A stretch of DNA of 63,916 nucleotides, the filler included, from Ministeria vibrans ATCC 50519 (lineage: Eukaryota; Protista; Filasterea): assembly GCA_943704425.1 (NCBI GenBank). It is 6 parts of 6 records of this genome, joined end to end, with 100 filler letters (N's around TTAATTAATTAA, not from the genome) between each part and the next. Parts side by side here need not be neighbours in the genome. Positions count along the whole stretch, not along the records: positions 14,671 to 39,580 come from CALSCP010002438.1; 5 more parts are not named here. One strand, 5' to 3'. This document shows, in pieces, positions 1,760 through 27,426 of the stretch (position 1 is the stretch's first letter; every line of letters begins with the position of its first letter). Under the pieces are notes generated by a model, which had not been told where the DNA came from, did no database searches, and worked only from the letters and a program-made list of their open reading frames with translations. A program made the position numbers and the translations under genes.

Positions 1760-4700
1760 TTAGGTGGCACTGTCATTCTCGGCAGTTTGCCGGGGGTCGC
1801 CTGCCCGCAATGGACCCGGCGAGAGCAAGCGCTGTGGATAGTGCGCCTTGATGGCGTCCAGGAGGCGCTGTGCGACGGCAAGGAAATCGTCCGAGTGCCG
1901 CAGTACACGGTCGTTGGGCAATTCAGCGTGCACGTCGTCAATAAAGTCGGCAAGCAGCCCCATGAGCTCAACACAACACTGCTGTCCAAACTCATCAATC
2001 GCACTACTCATGCCCGCACTGTAATTGAAAAGCGTCTTGCACACCAGCTGGCACACTGTCCAGTCTTCCCGACCCCACTGCACAAGCACGTCCACCAGTC
2101 TACAGAAGCAACAAAGCAGTAATTTAGTTCCTCATGTGAATTTCAAGCAGGCGGGGGGGGGGGGGGGACACGCTGCTTTATACATATTGGGGCCTGATGC
2201 CTCGCAAAGGAAGCGCCGGTGCTCACGGTCCGCCATCATGTTGATCAGCACCCCACACGCTGTGATGACCACCTCGCTTGAGCGTTTGTGCTCCTGTACA
2301 ACACTGAGCAACAAAGGTCCCACTACACGACAGACAATAGTGAGTGAGTGTGCGCCTTGAACGGGTCAGTAAGAGAGCGGGTGAGCCAGTGAGTAAGTCA
2401 GTCAGTCAGTCAGTCACTGACTCACTCACTCACCCAGTGAGAGTACATGGGTGAGGGTGGTGCACTCATTCGTACCGCCTTGTGAACGCAGCAGTGTGCG
2501 CACATCCTCATAGCGAGTCAGATTGCCCAGTACTCGCGACGCTTCCGTAATCATCTCAACATTTTCGTGTTGTAACAGAGGAATCAATCCTAGGTTAGAT
2601 ATATTACATCTTGCCTCAGAGAGACCATTGCCTACTTACGTTCAACGACAGACAATCTCAGGCAAATAACACAGTTTCGCGGATCATCATAGTACGACAG
2701 ATTATGCACCGCCCCCACTGCATTCAGTACAAGCTCTTCATTGCCACACTGGCCGTCTATCCAAAGAGTAGCGGAGCAAGTTTAGTCCAAGAGAGGATGG
2801 GGTGAGTGAGTGAGTGAGTGATTGTGTGATGTGTGTGTACCAATAAACTGAATGACTGACTCAACGCTCTTCAGTGCCGCAATGGACGGGCCCACCTCGG
2901 GATGAATTGAGAGATTGGCAATCACTCGAATCAGCTGATAAATACAATCAAATCATGATCTTTTCACTGTTAGAAAGCTTAAACTATTTATACCTTTATA
3001 ACAATGTTTTGTGCATCTGCCAAATCTGGTGTGCTCTCCCTACATGATTGACATTTAGTCCAATCATTAATCGTTGGTTTTTGCTACCTCTTTTTGATTT
3101 GCTTTGCGTACTCATCGAGCAGCGCAAAGAAGATCGTGATAGCACTAAAGGCATTGAAGAGAGCCAAGCGCACTCCATTTGCGTGTGACGTGAGGTTCCC
3201 CAGCACAAACGCAATGCGCAACACAATTGGTTGGTGAGTGGTGGCATAGCGCGCGAGCAAGGGCACAAGAGCAACACTGAGCTGCTCGAGCGCCCCATTG
3301 ATCTCAGGGGTCGAATCGGCAATCTTATTGGATGCATCGACTGGTGTTGTGATGGTGGTGGAGGGTATTTTCATATGCATGTCTGTGGTGATGGTGAGTT
3401 TGCTGAGAATTCGTGAGACGTTGAGGATCACTTCGGAGTCGCTGCAGAAGGGCTGAAGCAGACGATACAGTGCCTACATATATATATATATATATATATA
3501 TATACATTAAGACAAATCGTTTCGTTTTTAAATATTTTGAACCTGAGTGACTTGTGCACGACGGAAAAGCGGACGATGGTCGGGAGCAACAGCAAGATTG
3601 CGGAGGGTTGCGGTGACAAGCACGACAAGGTGAGTGTACTGCTGCCGCAGAAGGTCGCTCGTAGTACTACTACTACTACTGATACTATTACTCGTGTGAG
3701 AGAGAGGTGTGTTTGGTGTGCTTGGGGCTGGTGTGATGGCGGTGGTACACGAGGCGTGAACAACATGTGACAGGAGCACTGTGAGGGCTTCGATGAGATG
3801 GAGATCGCGTGCAAAACGGCTCTGCGCTGTGTCGTCATTGCTCAAGTTGCGTAGGGTCGCCATGACGTAGATGAGACCTTGTAATTGCGATGGTGATGTG
3901 GTGGCAACGCTAAGGAGTCTCACTAAAACGCGTTCGAGTCCGTGTGCGTCAAAGAGTGGATCGTGTGCTGCAACACGCGACAGTCGAAAGATCAGTTTGG
4001 CCGTGGCGGTGAATGTACTGCCTTCTTGGCGCAGCAGAAAGGCAATTTTTGCCAGACGGAGGGCCAGAGCTGCAAGGGATGCTGGAGGGCTCGCGCTGTT
4101 GATCGCATCGCGGTGTACTTCGATAACACGAAATAGCGTCTGAAGTAAAGCTTTGCGATTGCGACCGCGCTCGAGCATCCCCTGCTTGTCCAGGACGTCT
4201 TCAATGCTGACGCAAGTCTGAAGCAGCGATGTCCACGTTTCGTCGTCAACGAGTGACGTATCTTGCACACCCTGGTGCACCAGTGTCTCGGTGAGAGGTG
4301 CAAGCGCCTCCAAGCGGCCTTGGTCACCCTCGGGTTGTTGGGTGGACGAGTCGTCGTCCGTTGATAATGAGGCAGTTCGTCCCACGGAACGGTGTCGTCG
4401 AGCAGCGGCCGGAGCACTGCGAACCCCTTCGGGGCGATCGGCAGCTGGCGGTTTGGGCGCCACCGGTGGTTTGTCGACGGTTGTCGAAGCCAACGAGTGT
4501 TCACGCGGCACTGTGGCAGGGGCGACGCTTCGCGGTTGACTCTCGTGCTGTTCGACGGCAGCGGCAATGGACGTTGAGCGTGATCGCCGACGCGCCAGTG
4601 CGCCATGGCTGGGTCTCTGTAAGAGAGGGGGATGCTGTTATCGCGTCGAGCCTCTGCGCAGACGGCGTACCTCGCCACTGGGGGGTCGTGGAACTGTTCT

Positions 4701-14670: not shown

Positions 14671-15030
14671 ATGTCGGTGTCGCACAGTGCGCCGGTGTAA
14701 CCAGGGAGACATGAACAAGTGTGGCCGTTGACATTGTCGGTGCAGTTGCCAAAGGCGCACGGTGACGACGCACAGTCATCAATGTCGGTGTCGCACAGTG
14801 CGCCGGTGTAACCAGGGAGGCATGAGCAAGTGTGGCCGTTGACATTGTCGGTGCAGTTGCCAAAGGCGCACGGTGACGACGCACATTCATCAATGTCGGT
14901 GTCGCACAGTGCGCCGGTGTAACCAGGGAGGCATGAACAAGTGTGGCCGTTGACATTGTCGGTGCAGTTGCCAAAGGCGCACGGTGACGACGCACATTCG
15001 TCCATGTCGGTGTTGCACAGTGCGCCGGTG
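14671..15030 (-). repeat. 111-bp coding tandem repeat (37-aa EGF unit), ~3 copies
   Basis: Near-identical DIDECASSPCAFGNCTDNVNGHTCSCLPGYTGALCDT units; nucleotide period 111. Confidence 0.9.
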
Positions 15031-16328
15031 AAGCCCGAAGCGCAAAAGCAGAAGAATGCGTTGCTGTTGTCAATGCAGGAAGCACCGTTTCCACAAGGGG
15101 ACGAAGAGCATTCGGTCATTGTGTCCGAGCACGTCGGCCCCGCAAACGGCGTTTGACAGGTACAACTAAACATCCCGAATCCGTCTGTGCAAGTACCATT
15201 GTTCTCACAGGGAAACGACGCGCACTCGTCAATGACCGTGTCACAGGTCACGCCAGTGAAGCCATTAGCGCAGTTACATATGAACATATTCGTGGCATCA
15301 GTGCATGTACTGCCCAATTCACAGGGTGACGAGGCACACTCATCGATGTTGATAGTGCACTGTGAGCCTGTAAAGCCCGGCGAACAGGTGCACATGTACG
15401 AGGCAGTACCGCCCGAACACGTACCAAACTCGCTGCAGGGCGATGAGCTACACTCATCAATGTCGATGGAGCAAGTAGAGCCTGTCAGGCCCGGAGGACA
15501 GGCGCATGTAAACTGTGCGATGCCATCGACACAAGTGCTGGCCACATCACAAGGCGACGACGCGCACTCGTCAATGTCCGAGTCGCAGAGCATTCCGCTG
15601 TAGCCGGAAGTGCAAGTGCAGAGAAAGGAACCTGGCGATGGGGTGGAGCAGTTCCCGAATGCACAAGGCGACGACGCGCACTCGTCAATGTCCGAGTCGC
15701 AGAGCATTCCGCTGTAGCCGGAAGTGCAAGTGCAGAGAAAGGAACCTGGCGATGGGGTGGAGCAGTTCCCGAATGCACAAGGCGACGACGCGCACTCGTC
15801 AATGTCCGAGTCGCAGAGCATTCCGCTGTAGCCGGAAGTGCAAGTGCAGAGAAAGGAACCTGGCGATGGGGTGGAGCAGTTCCCGAATGCACAAGGCGAC
15901 GACGCGCACTCGTCAATGTCTGAGTCGCAGAGCATTCCGCTGTAGCCGGAAGTGCAAGTGCAAGTGAACCCGTTTGCTCCATCTGCACAAGTTCCTGAGT
16001 TGTGACATGGTGACGATTCACATTCATCAACGTTTGTCTCGCAAACGGTCCCCGTGAAGCCTGAATCGCACACACACACAAATAGCCCTGGTGATGGTGA
16101 TGTACAGTTGCCTTGCTGGCATGGCTGCGACTCGCAGACGTCGAACAAGCTCTCGCAAAGCTCTCCGGTGAATCCCGCACCGCAAATGCAAGTGAATTGA
16201 CTCGCAGGCGAGCCAGGCACGCAGGTCGCGCCATTCATGCAGGGGCCCGTCTGACACATGCTGGCCGCCGGTGCAATGAGAATCGCGCACGCCAACGAGA
16301 GAATGAACAAGTTTTTTGAACACGTCAT
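14671..16328 (-). CDS. Secreted/surface protein with tandem calcium-binding EGF repeats (Notch/fibropellin-like), 3' truncated
   Basis: Intronless ORF. Signal peptide MTCSKNLFILSLACAILIAPAAS, then ~14 six-cysteine EGF units, most starting D(I/V)DEC. Confidence 0.92.
15549..15962 (-). repeat. 114-bp coding tandem repeat (38-aa EGF unit), ~3.5 copies
   Basis: tagccggaag recurs at 15601, 15715, 15829 and 15943; unit DIDECASSPCAFGNCSTPSPGSFLCTCTSGYSGMLCDS. Confidence 0.92.
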
Positions 16329-16647
16329 CAATGGAAAATATTTTTTTTCACAAAAAAATTCTTCACACGCCCCAAAAGTTTTTCAACACCCAATTGCCCA
16401 CAAGGCGAGTGAGCAGAAAGCCAAAGAGTCTGCTCTGTGTGTCAAGACGTTGCACGTGTTGCCCAAGCACTGCAAGACAGGTCAATAAAATTATTCACTT
16501 TTTTAAAAAACTTTTTGCAGAGCGATTAAAAGCAACCTCCGAAATCCGAATCTATAAAACGTTATAATTATAATAATTATTATTCTAATCTCGACAAAAA
16601 ATAATAATGGAGTTTTGATATATTATGTTTCTGAGGGATGTTTTCTG

Positions 16648-18324: not shown

Positions 18325-18455
18325 CGAAAATAAAAAAAATATGAACTGTGAAGTGGATAAGTTTTAAAACTCATCGAATAATTCTCATAAATCGCAATTT
18401 CGCATTGTATTTAGTCGCGTGGTCTCACTGGTGGACTGACAGCCTGCCGTCTGGC

Positions 18456-21400
18456 ATGGGAGGAAGAGTCTCCAAGCTTCCGCAAGCGCGTCGGCGGTCC
18501 CAGTCGATCCGGCCGAGACGATCGTCTTCGCGCGCCTCCTTCCCTGACCGCCTGCAGCCGCACCAGCTGGCGCCGGCCGCATTGCTTGTGGCGCGTGCCA
18601 TTGAAAAGGCGACGGCCATTGGCAAGCAGACTGTCCGCGTGTTGGTGTGGCCCTGCGGTTGCGATGCGGTCAGCGCAGCCCACGCCATCAACACAGCGCT
18701 CCACGACGTTGACGACGGACGCCTCAGCCTGCTCCTTGTCCCTGTCTCCCTCTGCTTCACCGAACGCAGTCCCTGCGGTGTGCCCGACGCTATGCTGGAC
18801 ACCGTCGTGCGCACTGTCGACTCTGCAGATCTCGTCTTACTTGTTGTCGCTGCCGATGCGGCCGCCTCTGCCGACCCCGCTGCCTTTGAGCGCGCCTGCT
18901 ACGCCCGCGCACAGAGTCCGCATAGCAGCGACGCAGATGCGCTGTGGTTTGCCGCCGAGGTGCTTCAGGCTGCGTCCGATGCTCCTCCTGCGGTCTCACT
19001 GTCGGCGCTCGTCGCCAAACGCACTCTCCACAACGCCACTCCATTGCTCAGTGTCGCACTTGCGCCACAGAACCCAGAAGGACCCTCGTCGTCGTCCTCA
19101 ACTGCACCGCAACAGTCCAATGAGGCGGACAACCTGTGCGTGGAGTCGCGCTCTGTCGCCTCCCTTCCGCATCACCACAACACAACCGACCCACTGCGTG
19201 CTTGGCTCGCTCACACTCCCACAAGCGATGAGTGCGCTCAAGTGGCGTTGTCGTCGCCCAACGATTGTGCCGATGCGGTGCGCCGACTCATCAGTGCTGT
19301 GCGTGCTCCGCCGACACACGCGGACGACTTGGATGCGGCTCTATTTAACAGCGAAGCGCTCTTTGCAAGTCTGTGCCTTGACGACATTGCCAATGGCCAA
19401 GAGGAGCCCTTCTTTCACACACGTTTTATTCAAATCAGCAACGAAATTAAAGCACATTTTGCAGCAACCACATCGGGATCAACGTCAAGCAGCAGAAAAA
19501 ACCAAAACAACTGTGGGGGCGTTGTGCTACTCCTTGGGCCCGATGGCGTCGGCAAGGCAACGCTACTCGCTCGCTTTATCTGTCAACTCGAACTTCCCGT
19601 GCACGACCAGTCACAGCAGGTTGATCAGTGGGAGGATTGCGATACGGCCGCCTCGGAAACCCCACCGGGAATGGCTACGCCACACTGTCCAGCGCCACTT
19701 GTGCTCTCCTTCTTTGGTCGCACACCCGACCGCTTCACCCTTGTCTCATCCCTTGTCAATCAGCTCACACGCTGGTTGGGCCTTGCTGTTGCCCCCGTAT
19801 CACCTACAGTCAGCGAGGCGCGACACTTACTCGTGCAGCTCATGCACACAGCAGTCGCGTCGGCTCGCTGGTCGGCCGTCTACATTGTCGTGAGCGATAT
19901 TCATTTGTGCGCTCCCGACTGGCCGGACTGGCTGCCTCGCATGGCCGCACTCTGTGCCGTTCACATTCTGCTCTCAGGAAACAACATTGACGCGCCACAG
20001 AGTGTCGCGCACACGGCACATGTGCGTACCATCCGAGTGCCCCTTGTCAACCGCCTTGGCCGGCGTCACTTGGTGCGTGTGGCCCTTGACTCGCTTGGAG
20101 TGCAGCGTGACTCTCCGACACGCCGTTTAGACGAGGATTCATTGCCACAACGAAGCGAAGACAAAGACTGCACACACTGGCTTGACGGGGCCACTTCATT
20201 GCCACTTTGTCACCGTCTTGCACTGACTGCGGCGCGCTCTTGTCTCACGTGCGAAGCTGCACACAACTGTTACACCGCCGTTGTGTCCATGCCCACCTGT
20301 GAGGAGGTGGCCCTTGCTGCTCTGGACCAGTGTATGCGCCAGGCCGCCGCCGGCGAGTGCGCCGCTGCCATTGCCGATGTACTGGCGGCGCTAGTGTGCA
20401 CACGCTCCGGTCTCATTGAACGTCACCTCGTTGAGTGGTGCACCCACTGTGGCTACACGACGGGCACAGTGCACTTTGTACTCGCGACGCTGCATCCTTT
20501 GCTCGTTGCGAATGGCCGTCACATCCGCATTGCGCATCCCGTGGTGTGTACCGCTGTGTTGCGTATAGTCTTTGACAGCGACGACGATGGGTCGCGGGTG
20601 ATGCGCCACCGTCGTCGCCTCTGCGACTTTTTCGCCGCCCGTCTTGAGCAGGCAGCGGGACGACGGTCGATGCTCAGGCAGATTCTGCCAGAGCTTGGTT
20701 GGCTTCTCATGACCGTAGACGACGGTCGTGAGCAGCTGTGTGCCCTTCTGGCTGACCTGAGTGTATTTGAGACGCTCTATGCGTCCCATTTGCGTGAGCT
20801 CTTTATGCAACTGTGGCTGCACTGTCTTGAGTCAAACAGTGGCGGCGCCACCCTGGTGCGTGGCTACATGGCACAACTGCACGCCAAGGTACATAATGTT
20901 GAGCAAAGCGTGCGCTTGAAGGAAGAAGCAGATCATTCCGCGACTAGGTCAACCGATGTCATCGGTGACCAGGAGGGAATGGGAAGGGAAAAATGTGGTG
21001 TGGGTGTAGGGTCTTTGTCAGCTGCACGACGGACGGTCGCGTCGGAGCTGAAGGAGAAGCGACGAAGGTCGTCTCAGATGCTGGAGGAGGAAGTGTCGCG
21101 ACATCGTCGACACTCTCGACGGCTAGCGTCGGAGGAAGAGGGCGCAGTGGTGCCGGGAGAGGCGTCGTTGCCTGCGATGGCTGGCCAATACTATCGTGTG
21201 GCATGTTTCCTACTGGGCATGGGCGATGCATTTGGGGCGCTTGAGCCGCTGGGTCGTGCGGTGGAGTTGTACGAGCGGGTGTTTGGCGGAGGGCACTTGG
21301 ATGTGGCTACTGCTCTGAACAATTTGGCGATGGTTCACATGCGCGTGGGACAACTGTCGAGTGCACTGGAGCTGTACGAGCGGGCTCGTCGTGTGTACGA

Positions 21401-22913
21401 ACAGTACGCGGTAGTCAGGAAGGAGGCAACGACGACGACGAGCGCGGAGCAGGTGCTGGTGACGGGCGAACGAACGGGCTTTGATCGACGACGGTTGAGT
21501 TGGCGTCTATCGCAGCGGCGCAGGAAGAAGCAAGAGAAGAAGAAGAAAAGTATTAGTTGTGACACGTCGCAGCAAGACGAAGACGCCGTTGCTGTGGTGA
21601 GTCAACTGCACATTGCGACAACGGAGCATAACATGGGACTGGTCTGCGAGAAGATGATGCGACTGCGCGAGGCAGAGCGGTACTATGCGAGTGCGCTGGC
21701 AATGCGCGAGCGGCTGCTTGGCGTGATGCATGTGGACACGCTGGCGTCGCAGTGGTCACTTGCTGGGTTACTTGTGTCTCAGCTGCGCTGGGACGATGCG
21801 GTAGTCGTGTTGGAGGATCTCGTGGGGTTGCGCACGACGGCGCAGGGTGCGTGGCATCCAGGGACTGTGGACGCGCTGGAGGCACTGGGGCGAGTCTACG
21901 CGGCGCTTGAAGGGCGCTCTGATGACGCCTTGCGAGTGTTTCGCGACGTGTATCGCGTGCGTCGGGCGTCGGGCGACCCTGCGGCACTGGCGCGCACTGC
22001 ACATAATCTAGGGAGTGTTCTGGTGCGCGTTGGGCAACCAAATGAGGCGCGTGGGTTGCTGGAGGAGGCCATGCGCACGCAGGAGTCAACTTTAGGTGAG
22101 GTGCACTGCGACACGGCTGCGACTTGGTTGACGCTGGCGCGTCTGTCGCGAAGTGTGGGCGACACGAGTGGTGCGATGGCGCTGTATTTGCGTGTGATTG
22201 AGGCGCGTGAACGATGTGCTGGTGTCACTAATAGCGATCTGGAGCTCATGACGGCCCGCAGTGGCCTTGCCACGCTGTATTGTGCGGGGGCTCAAGGTGA
22301 GCAAGAACGAGCGCTCGAGCTGTATGCACTCGTGCTCGATGGTATGGGATCAGTGGCGGCGCGCGCTGGCGAGCGGGGACACCTGGCGGTGCAGTGGGCA
22401 CGTTTGAATCGTGCTGTGGTGTTGGGAAGCGCTGCGGAGGCACATGTAGCACTGGGACACAGTCAACAAGGGCTACAGATGTACGCTGAGGCGATGGCGG
22501 CTGCCGAGGTGGAGGAAGGTGAGACGCGAGGACGTCAGTGTGTGGTTGTGGCCGAGCTGTGCTCTCAGTACGCGACGCATCTGGTGTCGAGTGGTTGCGT
22601 GGAGGAGGCCGAGGAGCACTTGTATGCAACAGTACGCCAGCTGGACGCCAGTATTGCGTCGTTGTCGTTGACAACTGCAGAGAATGCGAGGGTGAACGCA
22701 CTGTTGCCGTCGTTGCTTACGAAGCTGGCACGACTATTGCGCATGCGCGGTGATCACGTTGCGGCCGATCTGCTAGACGAGCGAAACAAGTTGGATGACA
22801 ATAAGGTATCATCGAGGGACTCCCCGGCAACACACGAAGCTTACCTGCGCGAATTATCATTGCTCAATCTGCAAATTGCTTTGTCGCGTTCCGTTCGAGT
22901 GACACTTGTCTAG
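18456..22913 (+). CDS. Nephrocystin-3-like protein (N-myristoylation motif, P-loop/NACHT-like domain, TPR array)
   Basis: Single 4.46-kb exon starting MGGRVSK (MGxxxS). Contains LLGPDGVGKA (Walker A-like) and ELGWLL...LADLSVFETLY...LW, similar to NPHP3. Kinesin-light-chain-type TPRs such as HLDVATALNNLA. Confidence 0.7.
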   Translation: MGGRVSKLPQARRRSQSIRPRRSSSRASFPDRLQPHQLAPAALLVARAIEKATAIGKQTVRVLVWPCGCDAVSAAHAINTALHDVDDGRLSLLLVPVSLCFTERSPCGVPDAMLDTVVRTVDSADLVLLVVAADAAASADPAAFERACYARAQSPHSSDADALWFAAEVLQAASDAPPAVSLSALVAKRTLHNATPLLSVALAPQNPEGPSSSSSTAPQQSNEADNLCVESRSVASLPHHHNTTDPLRAWLAHTPTSDECAQVALSSPNDCADAVRRLISAVRAPPTHADDLDAALFNSEALFASLCLDDIANGQEEPFFHTRFIQISNEIKAHFAATTSGSTSSSRKNQNNCGGVVLLLGPDGVGKATLLARFICQLELPVHDQSQQVDQWEDCDTAASETPPGMATPHCPAPLVLSFFGRTPDRFTLVSSLVNQLTRWLGLAVAPVSPTVSEARHLLVQLMHTAVASARWSAVYIVVSDIHLCAPDWPDWLPRMAALCAVHILLSGNNIDAPQSVAHTAHVRTIRVPLVNRLGRRHLVRVALDSLGVQRDSPTRRLDEDSLPQRSEDKDCTHWLDGATSLPLCHRLALTAARSCLTCEAAHNCYTAVVSMPTCEEVALAALDQCMRQAAAGECAAAIADVLAALVCTRSGLIERHLVEWCTHCGYTTGTVHFVLATLHPLLVANGRHIRIAHPVVCTAVLRIVFDSDDDGSRVMRHRRRLCDFFAARLEQAAGRRSMLRQILPELGWLLMTVDDGREQLCALLADLSVFETLYASHLRELFMQLWLHCLESNSGGATLVRGYMAQLHAKVHNVEQSVRLKEEADHSATRSTDVIGDQEGMGREKCGVGVGSLSAARRTVASELKEKRRRSSQMLEEEVSRHRRHSRRLASEEEGAVVPGEASLPAMAGQYYRVACFLLGMGDAFGALEPLGRAVELYERVFGGGHLDVATALNNLAMVHMRVGQLSSALELYERARRVYEQYAVVRKEATTTTSAEQVLVTGERTGFDRRRLSWRLSQRRRKKQEKKKKSISCDTSQQDEDAVAVVSQLHIATTEHNMGLVCEKMMRLREAERYYASALAMRERLLGVMHVDTLASQWSLAGLLVSQLRWDDAVVVLEDLVGLRTTAQGAWHPGTVDALEALGRVYAALEGRSDDALRVFRDVYRVRRASGDPAALARTAHNLGSVLVRVGQPNEARGLLEEAMRTQESTLGEVHCDTAATWLTLARLSRSVGDTSGAMALYLRVIEARERCAGVTNSDLELMTARSGLATLYCAGAQGEQERALELYALVLDGMGSVAARAGERGHLAVQWARLNRAVVLGSAAEAHVALGHSQQGLQMYAEAMAAAEVEEGETRGRQCVVVAELCSQYATHLVSSGCVEEAEEHLYATVRQLDASIASLSLTTAENARVNALLPSLLTKLARLLRMRGDHVAADLLDERNKLDDNKVSSRDSPATHEAYLRELSLLNLQIALSRSVRVTLV

Positions 22914-25249: not shown

Positions 25250-26500
25250 ATGACTGAAAAGGCAGCTGTTGCTTCGCGCGACCTTGGGGCTGCGCGACAA
25301 GCCTACTCGCTTGGGGACATTGAGGTGCGTCTCATGCAACACTTGCCCGGTTCTGCCGCACTCCGCTGCCGCACGACTCTCCGCGTGTCCCCTTCGCCTT
25401 CCGCTGTGGCCATGCTGAGTCTAGCGAAAGCGCCCATTCCCTCGTGAAACTCTTGCGGTTATCCCTTTCCCGCTTTTTTTTTTTTTTTCTCTCTCCACTC
25501 TTTGAGTCTTCGCACTGCAAGCCGTCCCCCCTCCTCACCTGCACTTGGAGGGGGCAGTGACCGTGCGGAGAGCAGGGCCGTGTCGCGTCGGCGTAGCTGG
25601 GCTGCGAGTGGCGCCATGAGAGCGTCGTCGTCTTACGCAAACCCCATTCTTCTACTTGTAGCTCTCCCGTATCGCCCACGAGGCAGGAGCGCCCGAGAAG
25701 CACACCAAGGGCGGCGACCACATCCGCAGCGTGATTCTTGGCGGTCTGGATGGCATTATCACGACGTTTGCTGTGGTCTCGGCGGTGGCGGGCGCCTCGT
25801 TGGCGTCTCAAGTGGTGCTCATTATGGGCTTTGCCAACCTGCTGGCCGACGGCATCAGCATGGGCTTTGGCGACGCCATCAGTAGCAATGCCGAGCTGCT
25901 TTTTGTGAAGAAGGAGCGCGCGCGCGAGATGTGGGAGATGGAGAACAACCCTGAGGGAGAGATTCGCGAGATGATTGAGATTTACACGGCGGCGGGCGTT
26001 GAAGAACAGGACGCCGAGCTGATTCTCACGACGATGGCCAAGTACACAGACTTCTTCGTGGACCACATGCTGGTCTTGGAGTTGGGCATGATGCCGCCGG
26101 ACGACGACGACAACCCCTGGAAGGGCGGCTTTGTCACGTTTATCTCCTTCCTCATCTTCGGCACGATCCCCCTTCTCTCCTACGCCATCTTCAACACCAT
26201 CAACTTTAGCGGCTTTGACCCTAAATTTCTCATTGCCTGCATTCTCACTGGCTGTGCTCTCTTCTGTCTCGGTTCCTTTAACGTATGCGGAAACCAACAC
26301 AATATTAGGAAGTGTACTCATCTCTCTCCTCATCTCTCTCCCTGTTCTGTTTCACCCAGTCTCGTTTTAACAGCCAAAAGTGGTACATTGGTGGCCTCTG
26401 GATTCTGTTCAATGGCGGTGTGGCTGCCGCTGCCTCATATGTCATTGGGCTGCTCGTTTCAAAGATCGTCGGTGACGGCGACGAATGTTCTACTCCCTGA
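25250..26500 (+). CDS. VIT1/CCC1 family vacuolar iron/manganese transporter
   Basis: Three exons: SVILGGLDGIITTFAVV, GFANLLADGISMGFGD, ERAREMWEMENNPEGEIREM, FGTIPLL. Confidence 0.93.
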
Positions 26501-26957
26501 GTCATTTCTTAAATTAATCGATTGAAAAGGTTTTTTATTTTTGTCTTCTTGACCAAAAGGCCACCCCCATCTCACTCATCTGACCTCTCAGCAATACATC
26601 TCGAACGAACGCAGCGAAGATGTTAATCAATCATGTTCCCAAACGAACTAATAATAACTATAATCTATATTATGATTATTATCAAAAATCACACTTTTAC
26701 CATTCAGTGAGTCGCAGTACACCAGTGTGCTTCAAAACCCTCCTGTTGATTACGATTGTGCGCGATGCGGTCGCCTCTGGTTGTGGTCGTGGCTGTTGCG
26801 TCGCTCTCGCTGTGCACTCTCGCGACGGGCCACAGTGTGCTGGGCGCACGCCGCCCCCCGACAGTTGTGAAGAAGCTCACAGGTGTGGTCTATGAGGCTG
26901 TCATGCGGAGCGTGGTCTCTTCTGTGCCTTGCATTTGATGTAAATGTCGCTGACGCT

Positions 26958-26992
<35 letters not shown>

Positions 26993-26993
26993 G

Positions 26994-27361
26994 ACGAAAC
27001 TGCCGCTGTGCACAATTTCCAACCGTTTGAGCACTGCGATCGTGTCACTGTCTGCAGATATGATGAAGAGCAGCACACTTTTTGAGCGGGAGTCACTGCG
27101 CCGTGCAGTTCTGACTGCTTATTGTCCCTCCGTGCTCGTTGAGACCTTTGGTAAGAGACAGTTTGCCCATTCCGCAGCGTGAACTGACATACACATGTTT
27201 GGGCAGGATTGGACAAGATTGCAAGCAACGTCCCTGAGACATACATGCGCGCCATTTTCTGCAAGTATCTCTCGTCGCGCTTTGTCTACCAGGCGGGTCT
27301 GGAGTTTTCGCCCTTTTCTTTCTTCGACTTCCTTACTGACCTGCAGGCCAAGTACTCTTGA
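26994..27361 (+). CDS. Isolated C-terminal 103 aa of Gdh2-type (large) NAD-specific glutamate dehydrogenase; exons 26994-27150 and 27207-27361
   Basis: Splicing GTAAGA..GGGCAG gives TKLPLCTISNRLSTAIVSLSADMMKSSTLFERESLRRAVLTAYCPSVLVETFGLDKIASNVPETYMRAIFCKYLSSRFVYQAGLEFSPFSFFDFLTDLQAKYS*. This fits the fungal Gdh2 C-terminus pattern as I recall it (ISNxLSxxI...LR...P..L....G......N(I/V)PExY....YL(S/A)SxFVYxxG...F.(D/E)F). Preceded by GCTGAC, a long T tract and CAG. Confidence 0.8.
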
Positions 27362-27390
27362 GTCTATTCCACTATTCTGTGTCATGTTTG

Positions 27391-27426
<36 letters not shown>

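What the first reader, a model, noticed from the sequence alone, without database searches (positions are those of the whole stretch)
26620..27361. Orphan but intact C-terminal module of NAD-glutamate dehydrogenase: candidate trans-spliced or split gene
SEEN: two exons (26994-27150, 27207-27361) joined by a normal intron encode 103 stop-free aa ending in TGA. They are preceded by a complete 3' splice signal (GCTGAC at 26949-26954, ~27 T, CAG at 26991-26993). The VIT1 stop lies only ~490 nt upstream on the same strand, and the rest of this contig upstream is filled by unrelated genes with no GDH exons. KNOWN: the peptide matches the extreme C-terminus of Gdh2-type NAD-GDHs, ~1000+ aa single-chain enzymes in fungi and protists (recognised from memory, not searched). 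Similarity starts at the acceptor, 22 codons before the first internal ATG, so those codons are probably translated. INFERENCE: (a) a distant 5' half is joined by trans-splicing, as in Giardia split introns; or (b) the enzyme is split into two chains, using the AT-rich non-homologous exon 26620-26706 (ATG..TCA|GTGAGT, phase 0, in frame); or (c) partial duplicate or misassembly. The ORF track misses this gene.
Basis: partly seen in the sequence, partly recalled or inferred. Interest (0 to 1): 0.85.

Follow-up and report, generated by a model that had tools for sequence, protein, structure and literature searches.

The report
Assembly chimera splits an ordinary GDH gene
The "orphan" C-terminal piece of NAD-glutamate dehydrogenase is real coding sequence, but it looks orphaned only because the assembler wrongly joined two loci at a long run of T inside an intron; the gene is ordinary, in one piece and cis-spliced.

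Summary
Window 26994-27150 and 27207-27361 are two spliced exons encoding the last 103 residues of a Gdh2-type NAD-glutamate dehydrogenase.

The rest of the genome's only Gdh2-type gene lies on a 4.1-kb contig, C2305. Its last exon ends at a phase-0 donor (…REHNR|GTACGT), and the contig stops in a poly-T run 160 nt into that intron.

An independent public DNA contig (Logan SRR23272272_99060, locus L023) runs without a break from C2305's exons through a 173-nt intron (…T14-C-T7-ACACAG) into window 26994 onward. It shares nothing with the window's left flank.

RNA-derived contigs give the same picture:
- The GDH exons carry about 2.4 kb of further upstream mRNA.
- The sequence left of the T-run (26701-26882) is exon 1 of a different gene, a secreted thioredoxin-like protein. 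It splices to contig C433 and not to 26994.

Contig C2438 is therefore a chimera of two introns joined at T27 (26961-26987). I found no support for trans-splicing, a two-chain enzyme or a duplicate. Interest is low; the finding is an assembly artefact.

The parts
26994..27150 (+). Second-to-last coding exon of the single Gdh2-type NAD-GDH gene (52 codons plus the first base of a split Gly codon); enters in phase 0.
   Evidence: Translation. Aligns from residue 1 to P0158 911-960 and P0001 925-976. Covered by RNA contigs X8 and X9 and by DNA contig L023, which places it directly after the C2305 intron.
27151..27206 (+). Ordinary 56-nt GT..AG intron between the last two GDH exons.
   Evidence: Skipped in RNA-derived contigs of X8 and X9 (joint 27149>27206). 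Retained in DNA contigs X1 and X6.
27207..27361 (+). Last coding exon of the GDH gene, with stop TGA at 27359-27361.
   Evidence: BLASTP to the C-terminal ~45 residues of NAD-GDHs, e.g. P0001 976-1021 of 1023, E 3e-11, best E 2.5e-14. Also found by the genome search with P0001 (C2438:12533-12670).
26988..26993 (+). ACACAG, the 3' end and acceptor of the true GDH intron, whose 5' part lies on contig C2305.
   Evidence: Identical in L023:1475-1480, where T14-C-T7 and the C2305 intron sequence precede it.
26961..26987 (+). T27 homopolymer, the site of the false join between two unrelated introns (chimera breakpoint of contig C2438).
   Evidence: Run length. Logan DNA contigs of X1 and X6 coming from the left end inside it. 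L023 matches the window only from 26966 rightwards and matches C2305 to the left. C2305 ends in T9 at the same point.
26883..26960 (+).
   Evidence: RNA contigs leave the window at 26882 and continue with 30 letters that match only C433:67-96 in the genome. This flank is unrelated to L023.
26701..26882 (+). First exon of a thioredoxin-domain gene: 5' UTR plus ATG at 26765, a signal-peptide-like N-terminus (by eye) ending …VVKKLT, leaving in phase 1. The remaining exons are on contig C433.
   Evidence: RNA contigs X9 (26701-26882) and X8 (26708-26882). The C433 exons hit Pfam Thioredoxin PF00085 (E 6e-6 and 2.5e-4). Frame continuity across the junction was worked out.
26620..26706 (+).
   Evidence: Depth 0 in RNA contigs X8 and X9 over 26587-26668; the next RNA contigs begin at 26701/26708.
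25731..26552 (+). VIT1-family iron transporter gene (3' part): intron 26283-26359, stop at 26498-26500, poly(A) site at 26552.
   Evidence: Pfam PF01988, E 5.5e-53. The RNA loose end before 26360 equals 26253-26282, and a poly(A) tail follows 26552.

Best explanation
Window 26994-27361 holds the true last two exons of the organism's single, ordinary, cis-spliced Gdh2-type NAD-glutamate dehydrogenase gene.

In the real genome they follow the exon ending …LEFEVLWREHNR after an intron of about 170 nt whose 3' end is a long T-run plus ACACAG. In this assembly the upstream part of the gene was left on a separate 4.1-kb contig (C2305) that stops inside that T-run. The downstream part was wrongly attached to another intron that also runs into a long T-run. 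That other intron is intron 1 of a thioredoxin-like gene next to VIT1.

Contig C2438 is therefore a chimera with its breakpoint in or at T27 (26961-26987). The apparently complete 3' splice signal is a composite: the branch-like GCTGAC comes from one intron and the ACACAG acceptor from the other.

Shown here: the homology, the collinearity, the DNA continuity in an independent contig and the RNA connections. Inferred: that the sequenced isolate has the same arrangement as that contig.
For: 1. **One gene, two contigs.**
   - Searching the whole assembly with a 1023-aa NAD-GDH (P0001) finds exons only on C2305 (residues 462-923) and one on C2438 (975-1021).
   - tblastn extends this to about residue 56 through 921 on C2305, then 925-1021 in the window.
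2. **Exact fit at the junction.**
   - C2305's last exon ends at P0158 residue 910 and the window's first exon starts at 911.
   - The donor CGA|GTACGT is phase 0 and the acceptor CAG|ACG is phase 0.
3. **Contig ends.** C2305 ends in poly-T 160 nt into that intron.
4. **Independent DNA.**
   - Logan contig SRR23272272_99060 (L023, 1567 nt) matches C2305rc 2661-4129 at 99.4% and window 26966-27080 at 99.1%.
   - The two matches overlap only in the T-run.
   - Alignment A1 shows the window's left flank is unrelated to it.
   - X6 record 6 has the same length and runs 1484 nt upstream of 26998 without touching 26300-26944.
5. **GDH mRNA.** Contigs in X8 and X9 carry 2398-2414 nt upstream of 26998.
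6. **Left flank belongs to another gene.** Exon 26701-26882 is spliced to C433:67 (30/30 letters, unique in the genome). The C433 exons are a Thioredoxin domain. No joint 26882>26994 is listed.
7. **No support for the assembled join.** None of the laid contigs of the four runs spans it. An ORF specific to the join is not on record anywhere.
Against: - No raw reads of the sequenced isolate were available. All four runs were Logan contigs, which break at long homopolymers, so the false join itself is contradicted rather than seen to lack reads.
- L023 comes from an algae-metagenome run. It differs slightly from the assembly (99.1-99.4%; T14-C-T7 against T27), so it is a near-identical strain and not the same isolate.
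- The DNA between the left-hand T-run and C433:67 was not recovered. C433 has no AG before position 67, and its first 65 nt duplicate C137:6388-6452. The thioredoxin side therefore rests on RNA contigs only.
- The first GDH exon, about 15-55 residues, was not located.
Confidence: 0.95

Rival explanations
1. The join is real in the sequenced isolate. A reciprocal exchange between two intronic T-runs broke both the GDH gene and the thioredoxin-like gene in that strain only.
For: The assembly does contain the join. Logan contigs of the same-label organism (X1) stop on both sides of the T-run, so they neither confirm nor deny it. The strain behind L023 is not identical to the assembly.
Against: The same assembly has contigs that end exactly where the correct partners should attach: C2305 in the T-run and C433 at the exon. 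The reciprocal product is absent. It would inactivate the only Gdh2-type gene. C433's 5' end is also likely chimeric, so misjoins probably occur elsewhere in this assembly.
Confidence: 0.03
2. Trans-splicing. The 5' and 3' parts of the GDH gene are transcribed from separate loci and joined through a split intron, as in Giardia.
For: In this assembly the two parts lie on different contigs, and the mRNA is joined exactly at a donor and an acceptor.
Against: L023 shows the two parts as continuous DNA with one 173-nt intron. Duplex energy between the two 'halves' is no better than shuffles (z -1.07 and +0.45). The sequence upstream of the T-run belongs to another gene's intron.
Confidence: 0.01
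3. A naturally split two-chain enzyme. The 103-aa module is expressed alone, either from the AT-rich exon 26620-26706 or from the internal ATG.
For: 26620-26706 is an ATG-started, phase-0 open frame followed by GTGAGT.
Against: RNA contigs give depth 0 over 26587-26668 and the next contigs begin at 26701/26708. The exons lie inside ~2.7-kb RNA contigs with about 2.4 kb upstream. Homology begins at the acceptor, 22 codons before the first ATG.
Confidence: 0.01
4. A partial duplicate or decaying pseudogene copy of the GDH C-terminus.
For: None beyond its isolated position on the contig.
Against: It is the only copy in the assembly, and the C2305 gene lacks exactly this part. The frame is intact and it is spliced and expressed.
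Confidence: 0.005

Closest known systems
Gdh2-type (about 115 kDa, ~1000-aa) NAD-specific glutamate dehydrogenases of fungi and protists (Pfam architecture PF23147, PF23152, PF05088, PF00208)
   Same: Collinear with the ~1000-aa homologues from about residue 56 (P0001) or 14-39 (others) to within 2 residues of their C-terminus. Catalytic exons are 50-69% identical to them. Single chain, and one gene per genome here.
   Different: Nothing of biological note. Only the N-terminal 15-55 residues were not located, because the assembly also breaks at a T-run upstream of C2305.
Chimeric contigs and contig breaks at homopolymers or low-complexity repeats in draft assemblies
   Same: The breakpoint is in a T27 run. 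The partner contig ends in the same run. An independent contig and RNA contigs contradict the join. A probable second chimeric contig end lies nearby (C433:1-65 = C137:6388-6452).
   Different: The false join happens to rebuild a plausible intron (donor, branch-like motif, T-tract, CAG), which is why it looked like biology.
Giardia split-intron trans-splicing
   Same: Only the appearance: gene halves on different contigs and an mRNA joined at canonical splice sites.
   Different: The halves are contiguous in DNA (L023). There is no complementarity between the intron halves.

Membership tests
Gdh2-type NAD-glutamate dehydrogenase (C-terminal region) | The peptide aligns to the extreme C-terminus of full-length ~1000-aa NAD-GDHs. 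| tested here: met
   Exon 1 aligns to P0158 911-960 of 1008 (E 4.5e-9). Exon 2 aligns to P0027, P0162, P0163 and others (E about 1e-14) and to P0001 976-1021 of 1023.
Gdh2-type NAD-glutamate dehydrogenase (whole gene) | The catalytic domain (PF05088/PF00208) is in the same gene, collinear and physically linked. | tested here: met
   PF05088 E 8.1e-13 and PF00208 E 3.3e-4 on C2305 exons. L023 links C2305's exons to the window exon in continuous DNA.
Gdh2-type NAD-glutamate dehydrogenase (whole gene) | Complete N-terminus with a start codon. | tested here: inconclusive
   The first visible exon (ERLIPAEF…) corresponds to residues 14-56 of homologues. There is no ATG exon on C2305, whose upstream end is again a T-run.
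Trans-spliced split gene (Giardia-type split intron) | The two gene parts lie at separate genomic loci. | tested here: not met
   They are contiguous in L023, with a single 173-nt intron.
Trans-spliced split gene (Giardia-type split intron) | Extended base-pairing between the two intron halves. | tested here: not met
   RNAduplex against 200 shuffles gives z -1.07 (26707-26993) and +0.45 (26883-26993).
Assembly chimera at a repeat | Each flank of the junction continues elsewhere according to independent data. | tested here: met
   The right flank continues into C2305 (L023). The left flank's exon is spliced to C433:67.
Assembly chimera at a repeat | No reads of the sequenced isolate span the assembled join. 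| not testable with these tools
   Only Logan contigs were served. They stop in the T-run, and the tool masks 26945-26997.

The most novel reading that the evidence does not exclude
In the sequenced isolate itself the junction is genuine: a recombination between two intronic poly-T tracts exchanged the 3' ends of the GDH gene and a thioredoxin-like gene, knocking out the only NAD-GDH. The intact arrangement would then survive only in sister strains.
Probability: 0.03. Interest if true: 0.3.

Novelty: not a real feature. Interest (0 to 1): 0.05.

Why it matters
It removes a false lead. There is no trans-spliced or two-chain NAD-GDH here.

The practical value is technical:
- In this 2860-contig draft, long T-runs just before intron acceptors break contigs and can join unrelated introns into convincing fake introns.
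- Other "orphan" exon groups preceded by a T-run in this genome should first be checked against contig ends.
- Any annotation of C2438, C2305 and C433 will carry truncated or fused gene models for the GDH and the thioredoxin-like gene.

Tried and rejected
- **Loop model.** My first idea was that C2305, which has poly-T at both ends, is a 4.1-kb loop dropped between two T-runs at this locus, with 26765-26882 as GDH exon 1. I rejected it because that exon leaves in phase 1 while the first C2305 exon enters in phase 0, and because RNA joins it to C433.
- **Pfam on each window exon alone.** No hit.
- **PF21074 (GDH_C) on the genome.** No hit. That model is for the bacterial 180-kDa type.
- **Two metagenome-collection scans** with exact 32- and 38-nt patterns: nothing.
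- **Homologue search with the ORF across the T-run.** Nothing.
- **Homologue searches with P0001 and VIT1.** No near-identical proteins came back, so the organism could not be named.
- **Exact-product look-ups.** Ten of the eleven gave no help. Nine found no record, and one search used wrong coordinates through my own slip. One found only a 1.3-kb metagenome scaffold.
- **Joined protein.** The spliced 103-aa protein and the full GDH protein were never assembled or submitted; exons were searched one at a time, by reference.

Full report
**1. What is in the sequence.**

- Window 26994-27150 and 27207-27361 are open. With the split Gly codon they give 103 residues ending in TGA.
- Upstream lie GCTGAC (26949-54), a run of exactly 27 T (26961-26987) and CAG (26991-93).
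- The gene upstream is a VIT1-family transporter (Pfam PF01988, E 5.5e-53) with its stop at 26498-26500.
- Pfam does not recognise either short exon on its own. I therefore fetched full-length relatives by searching with a catalytic exon found elsewhere in the genome.
- Against those ~1000-aa NAD-specific glutamate dehydrogenases:
  - Exon 1 aligns from its first residue to P0158 911-960 of 1008 (E 4.5e-9).
  - Exon 2 aligns to the last ~45 residues of many of them (best E 2.5e-14; P0001 976-1021 of 1023, E 3e-11).
- The peptide is therefore the extreme C-terminus of a Gdh2-type enzyme.

**2. Where the rest of the gene is.**

- The window's piece is contig C2438 (24,910 bp) of a 29.7-Mb, 2860-contig assembly.
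- Pfam PF05088 and a full-length NAD-GDH (P0001) find Gdh2-type exons at only one other place, the minus strand of the 4129-bp contig C2305.
- tblastn shows C2305 carries the gene collinearly from about residue 56 of P0001 (14-39 of other homologues) to residue 921-923. The window continues at 925 to 1021 of 1023.
- In P0158 the C2305 exon ends at 910 and the window exon begins at 911.
- The C2305 exon ends …LEFEVLWREHNR with CGA|GTACGT in phase 0, and the window exon enters in phase 0.
- About 160 nt into that intron, contig C2305 simply ends in TTTTTTTTT. Its other end is also a T-run.
- There is thus one gene, and the contig holding its upstream exons breaks off in a homopolymer inside the intron.

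**3. Evidence from public runs (Logan contigs only).**

X8 and X9 behave as RNA. They skip 27150-27206, skip the VIT1 intron, and X8 shows a poly(A) tail after 26552. They show three things.
- The GDH exons sit in contigs of 2761 and 2775 nt, with 2398-2414 nt of further sequence upstream of 26998. The module is part of a long mRNA.
- Cover is zero over 26587-26668, and the next RNA contigs begin at 26701/26708.
- A transcript exon at 26701/26708-26882 leaves the window at the GTGTGG donor and continues with 30 letters that occur once in the genome, at C433:67-96.
  - The C433 exons encode a thioredoxin domain with a WCPHC motif (Pfam PF00085).
  - The window exon supplies the start codon (26765), what looks by eye like a signal peptide, and …VVKKLT, in frame with DATFEH… on C433.

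The sequence left of the T-run is therefore the start of intron 1 of another gene. No joint from 26882 to 26994 is listed.

The DNA contigs of X1 and X6 coming from the left stop inside the T-run. X6 record 6 (1567 nt) passes from 27080 leftwards through the T-run for another 1484 nt, none of which lies on 26300-26944.

**4. The decisive contig.**

- An exact-product look-up of the ORF that covers C2305's last exon returned Logan contig SRR23272272_99060 (L023). It is 1567 nt, the same length as X6 record 6.
- blastn shows L023:1-1464 equals C2305rc 2661-4129 (99.4%) and L023:1453-1567 equals window 26966-27080 (99.1%). The two matches overlap only in the T-run.
- Read directly, the contig runs …GAACACAATCGA|GTACGTCACC…TGTGTGTGA-T14-C-T7-ACACAG|ACGAAACTGCCG….
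- This is one ordinary 173-nt intron (L023:1308-1480).
- The three-way alignment (A1) shows the window's left flank (…GCTGACGCTTTC) is unrelated to this contig.
- L023 retains introns, so it is genomic DNA or at least an unspliced primary transcript. Either way the two gene parts are in cis.

**5. Test of the trans-splicing model on its own terms.**

- Giardia-type split introns pair extensively.
- The best duplex between C2305's intron half and window 26707-26993 or 26883-26993 is no better than shuffles (z -1.07 and +0.45).

**6. Explanation.**

- Contig C2438 is a chimera. Two introns that each run into a long T-tract just before the acceptor were joined at or in the T-run.
- The left half is VIT1, then thioredoxin-like exon 1, then the start of its intron.
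- The right half is ACACAG, then the last two GDH exons, then everything downstream.
- The "complete 3' splice signal" is a composite of the two introns.
- Long T-tracts before acceptors recur here. C2305 has a T28 before GTATAG| that was assembled correctly.
- C433's first 65 nt are a 100% copy of C137:6388-6452 and no AG precedes the exon at C433:67. That contig end is likely also chimeric.
- I put the misassembly reading at about 0.95.
- The main residual doubt is that no raw reads of the sequenced isolate could be laid and that L023 comes from a near-identical strain. A genuine strain-specific exchange between the two T-runs therefore keeps about 3%.

**7. Comparison with known things, and verdict.**

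- The gene is an ordinary member of the ~115-kDa NAD-GDH family. The membership features tested were met. The exception is the N-terminal start, which the assembly does not contain.
- Of the split-intron features, only the trivial one holds (an mRNA joined at canonical sites). Both discriminating ones fail: separate loci and paired intron halves.
- Interest is low. The useful by-product is a warning about T-run chimeras and truncated gene models in this draft genome.

Noticed in passing
window 26701-26882 and L012 (C433) 67-1007: A thioredoxin-domain gene (signal-peptide-like N-terminus by eye, WCPHC motif, acidic Glu-rich C-terminal tail) is split between C2438 and C433 by the same misassembly. 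The DNA between the left-hand T-run and C433:67 is missing from the assembly.
   Followed up: partly
L012 (C433) 1-65 and L014 (C137:6388-6452): The first 65 nt of contig C433 are 100% identical to an internal stretch of contig C137 and are followed by CA rather than AG before the exon. This is most likely a second chimeric contig end.
   Followed up: partly
L002 (C2305) 3954-4129, minus strand: The upstream end of C2305 is also a T-run. The first GDH exon visible (ERLIPAEF…) has no start codon, so about 15-55 N-terminal residues of the GDH lie on an unidentified contig or are unassembled.
   Followed up: partly
window 26552: VIT1 mRNA poly(A) site about 50 nt after the stop. The VIT1 intron 26283-26359 is confirmed by RNA contigs.
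   Followed up: yes
X8 record 9, loose end before 26708: 26 letters that look like bacterial 16S rRNA (recognised from memory, not searched) are fused to the 5' end of the thioredoxin transcript contig. This is probably a chimeric Logan contig, so the transcript start near 26701-26708 is approximate. X9 is labelled 'DNA?' but its contigs are spliced, so it behaves as RNA.
   Followed up: no
window about 27390-27426: A (GT)n microsatellite lies about 30 nt after the GDH stop codon. Contigs of all four laid runs stop there. Similar (GT)n tracts sit in introns of C433 and C2305.
   Followed up: no
window 18348-22913 (+) and 14671-16331 (-): A 1521-aa uninterrupted ORF with TPR_10/TPR_12 repeats, and an EGF-repeat ORF cut by the edge of the piece. 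Neither is related to the finding.
   Followed up: no
L015 (ENA metagenome scaffold, 1321 bp): A related strain in an environmental metagenome carries the same GDH exons with a few SNPs, one of which makes a TGA in the catalytic exon (TESE* against TESEC). This may be a sequencing error or strain variation.
   Followed up: no
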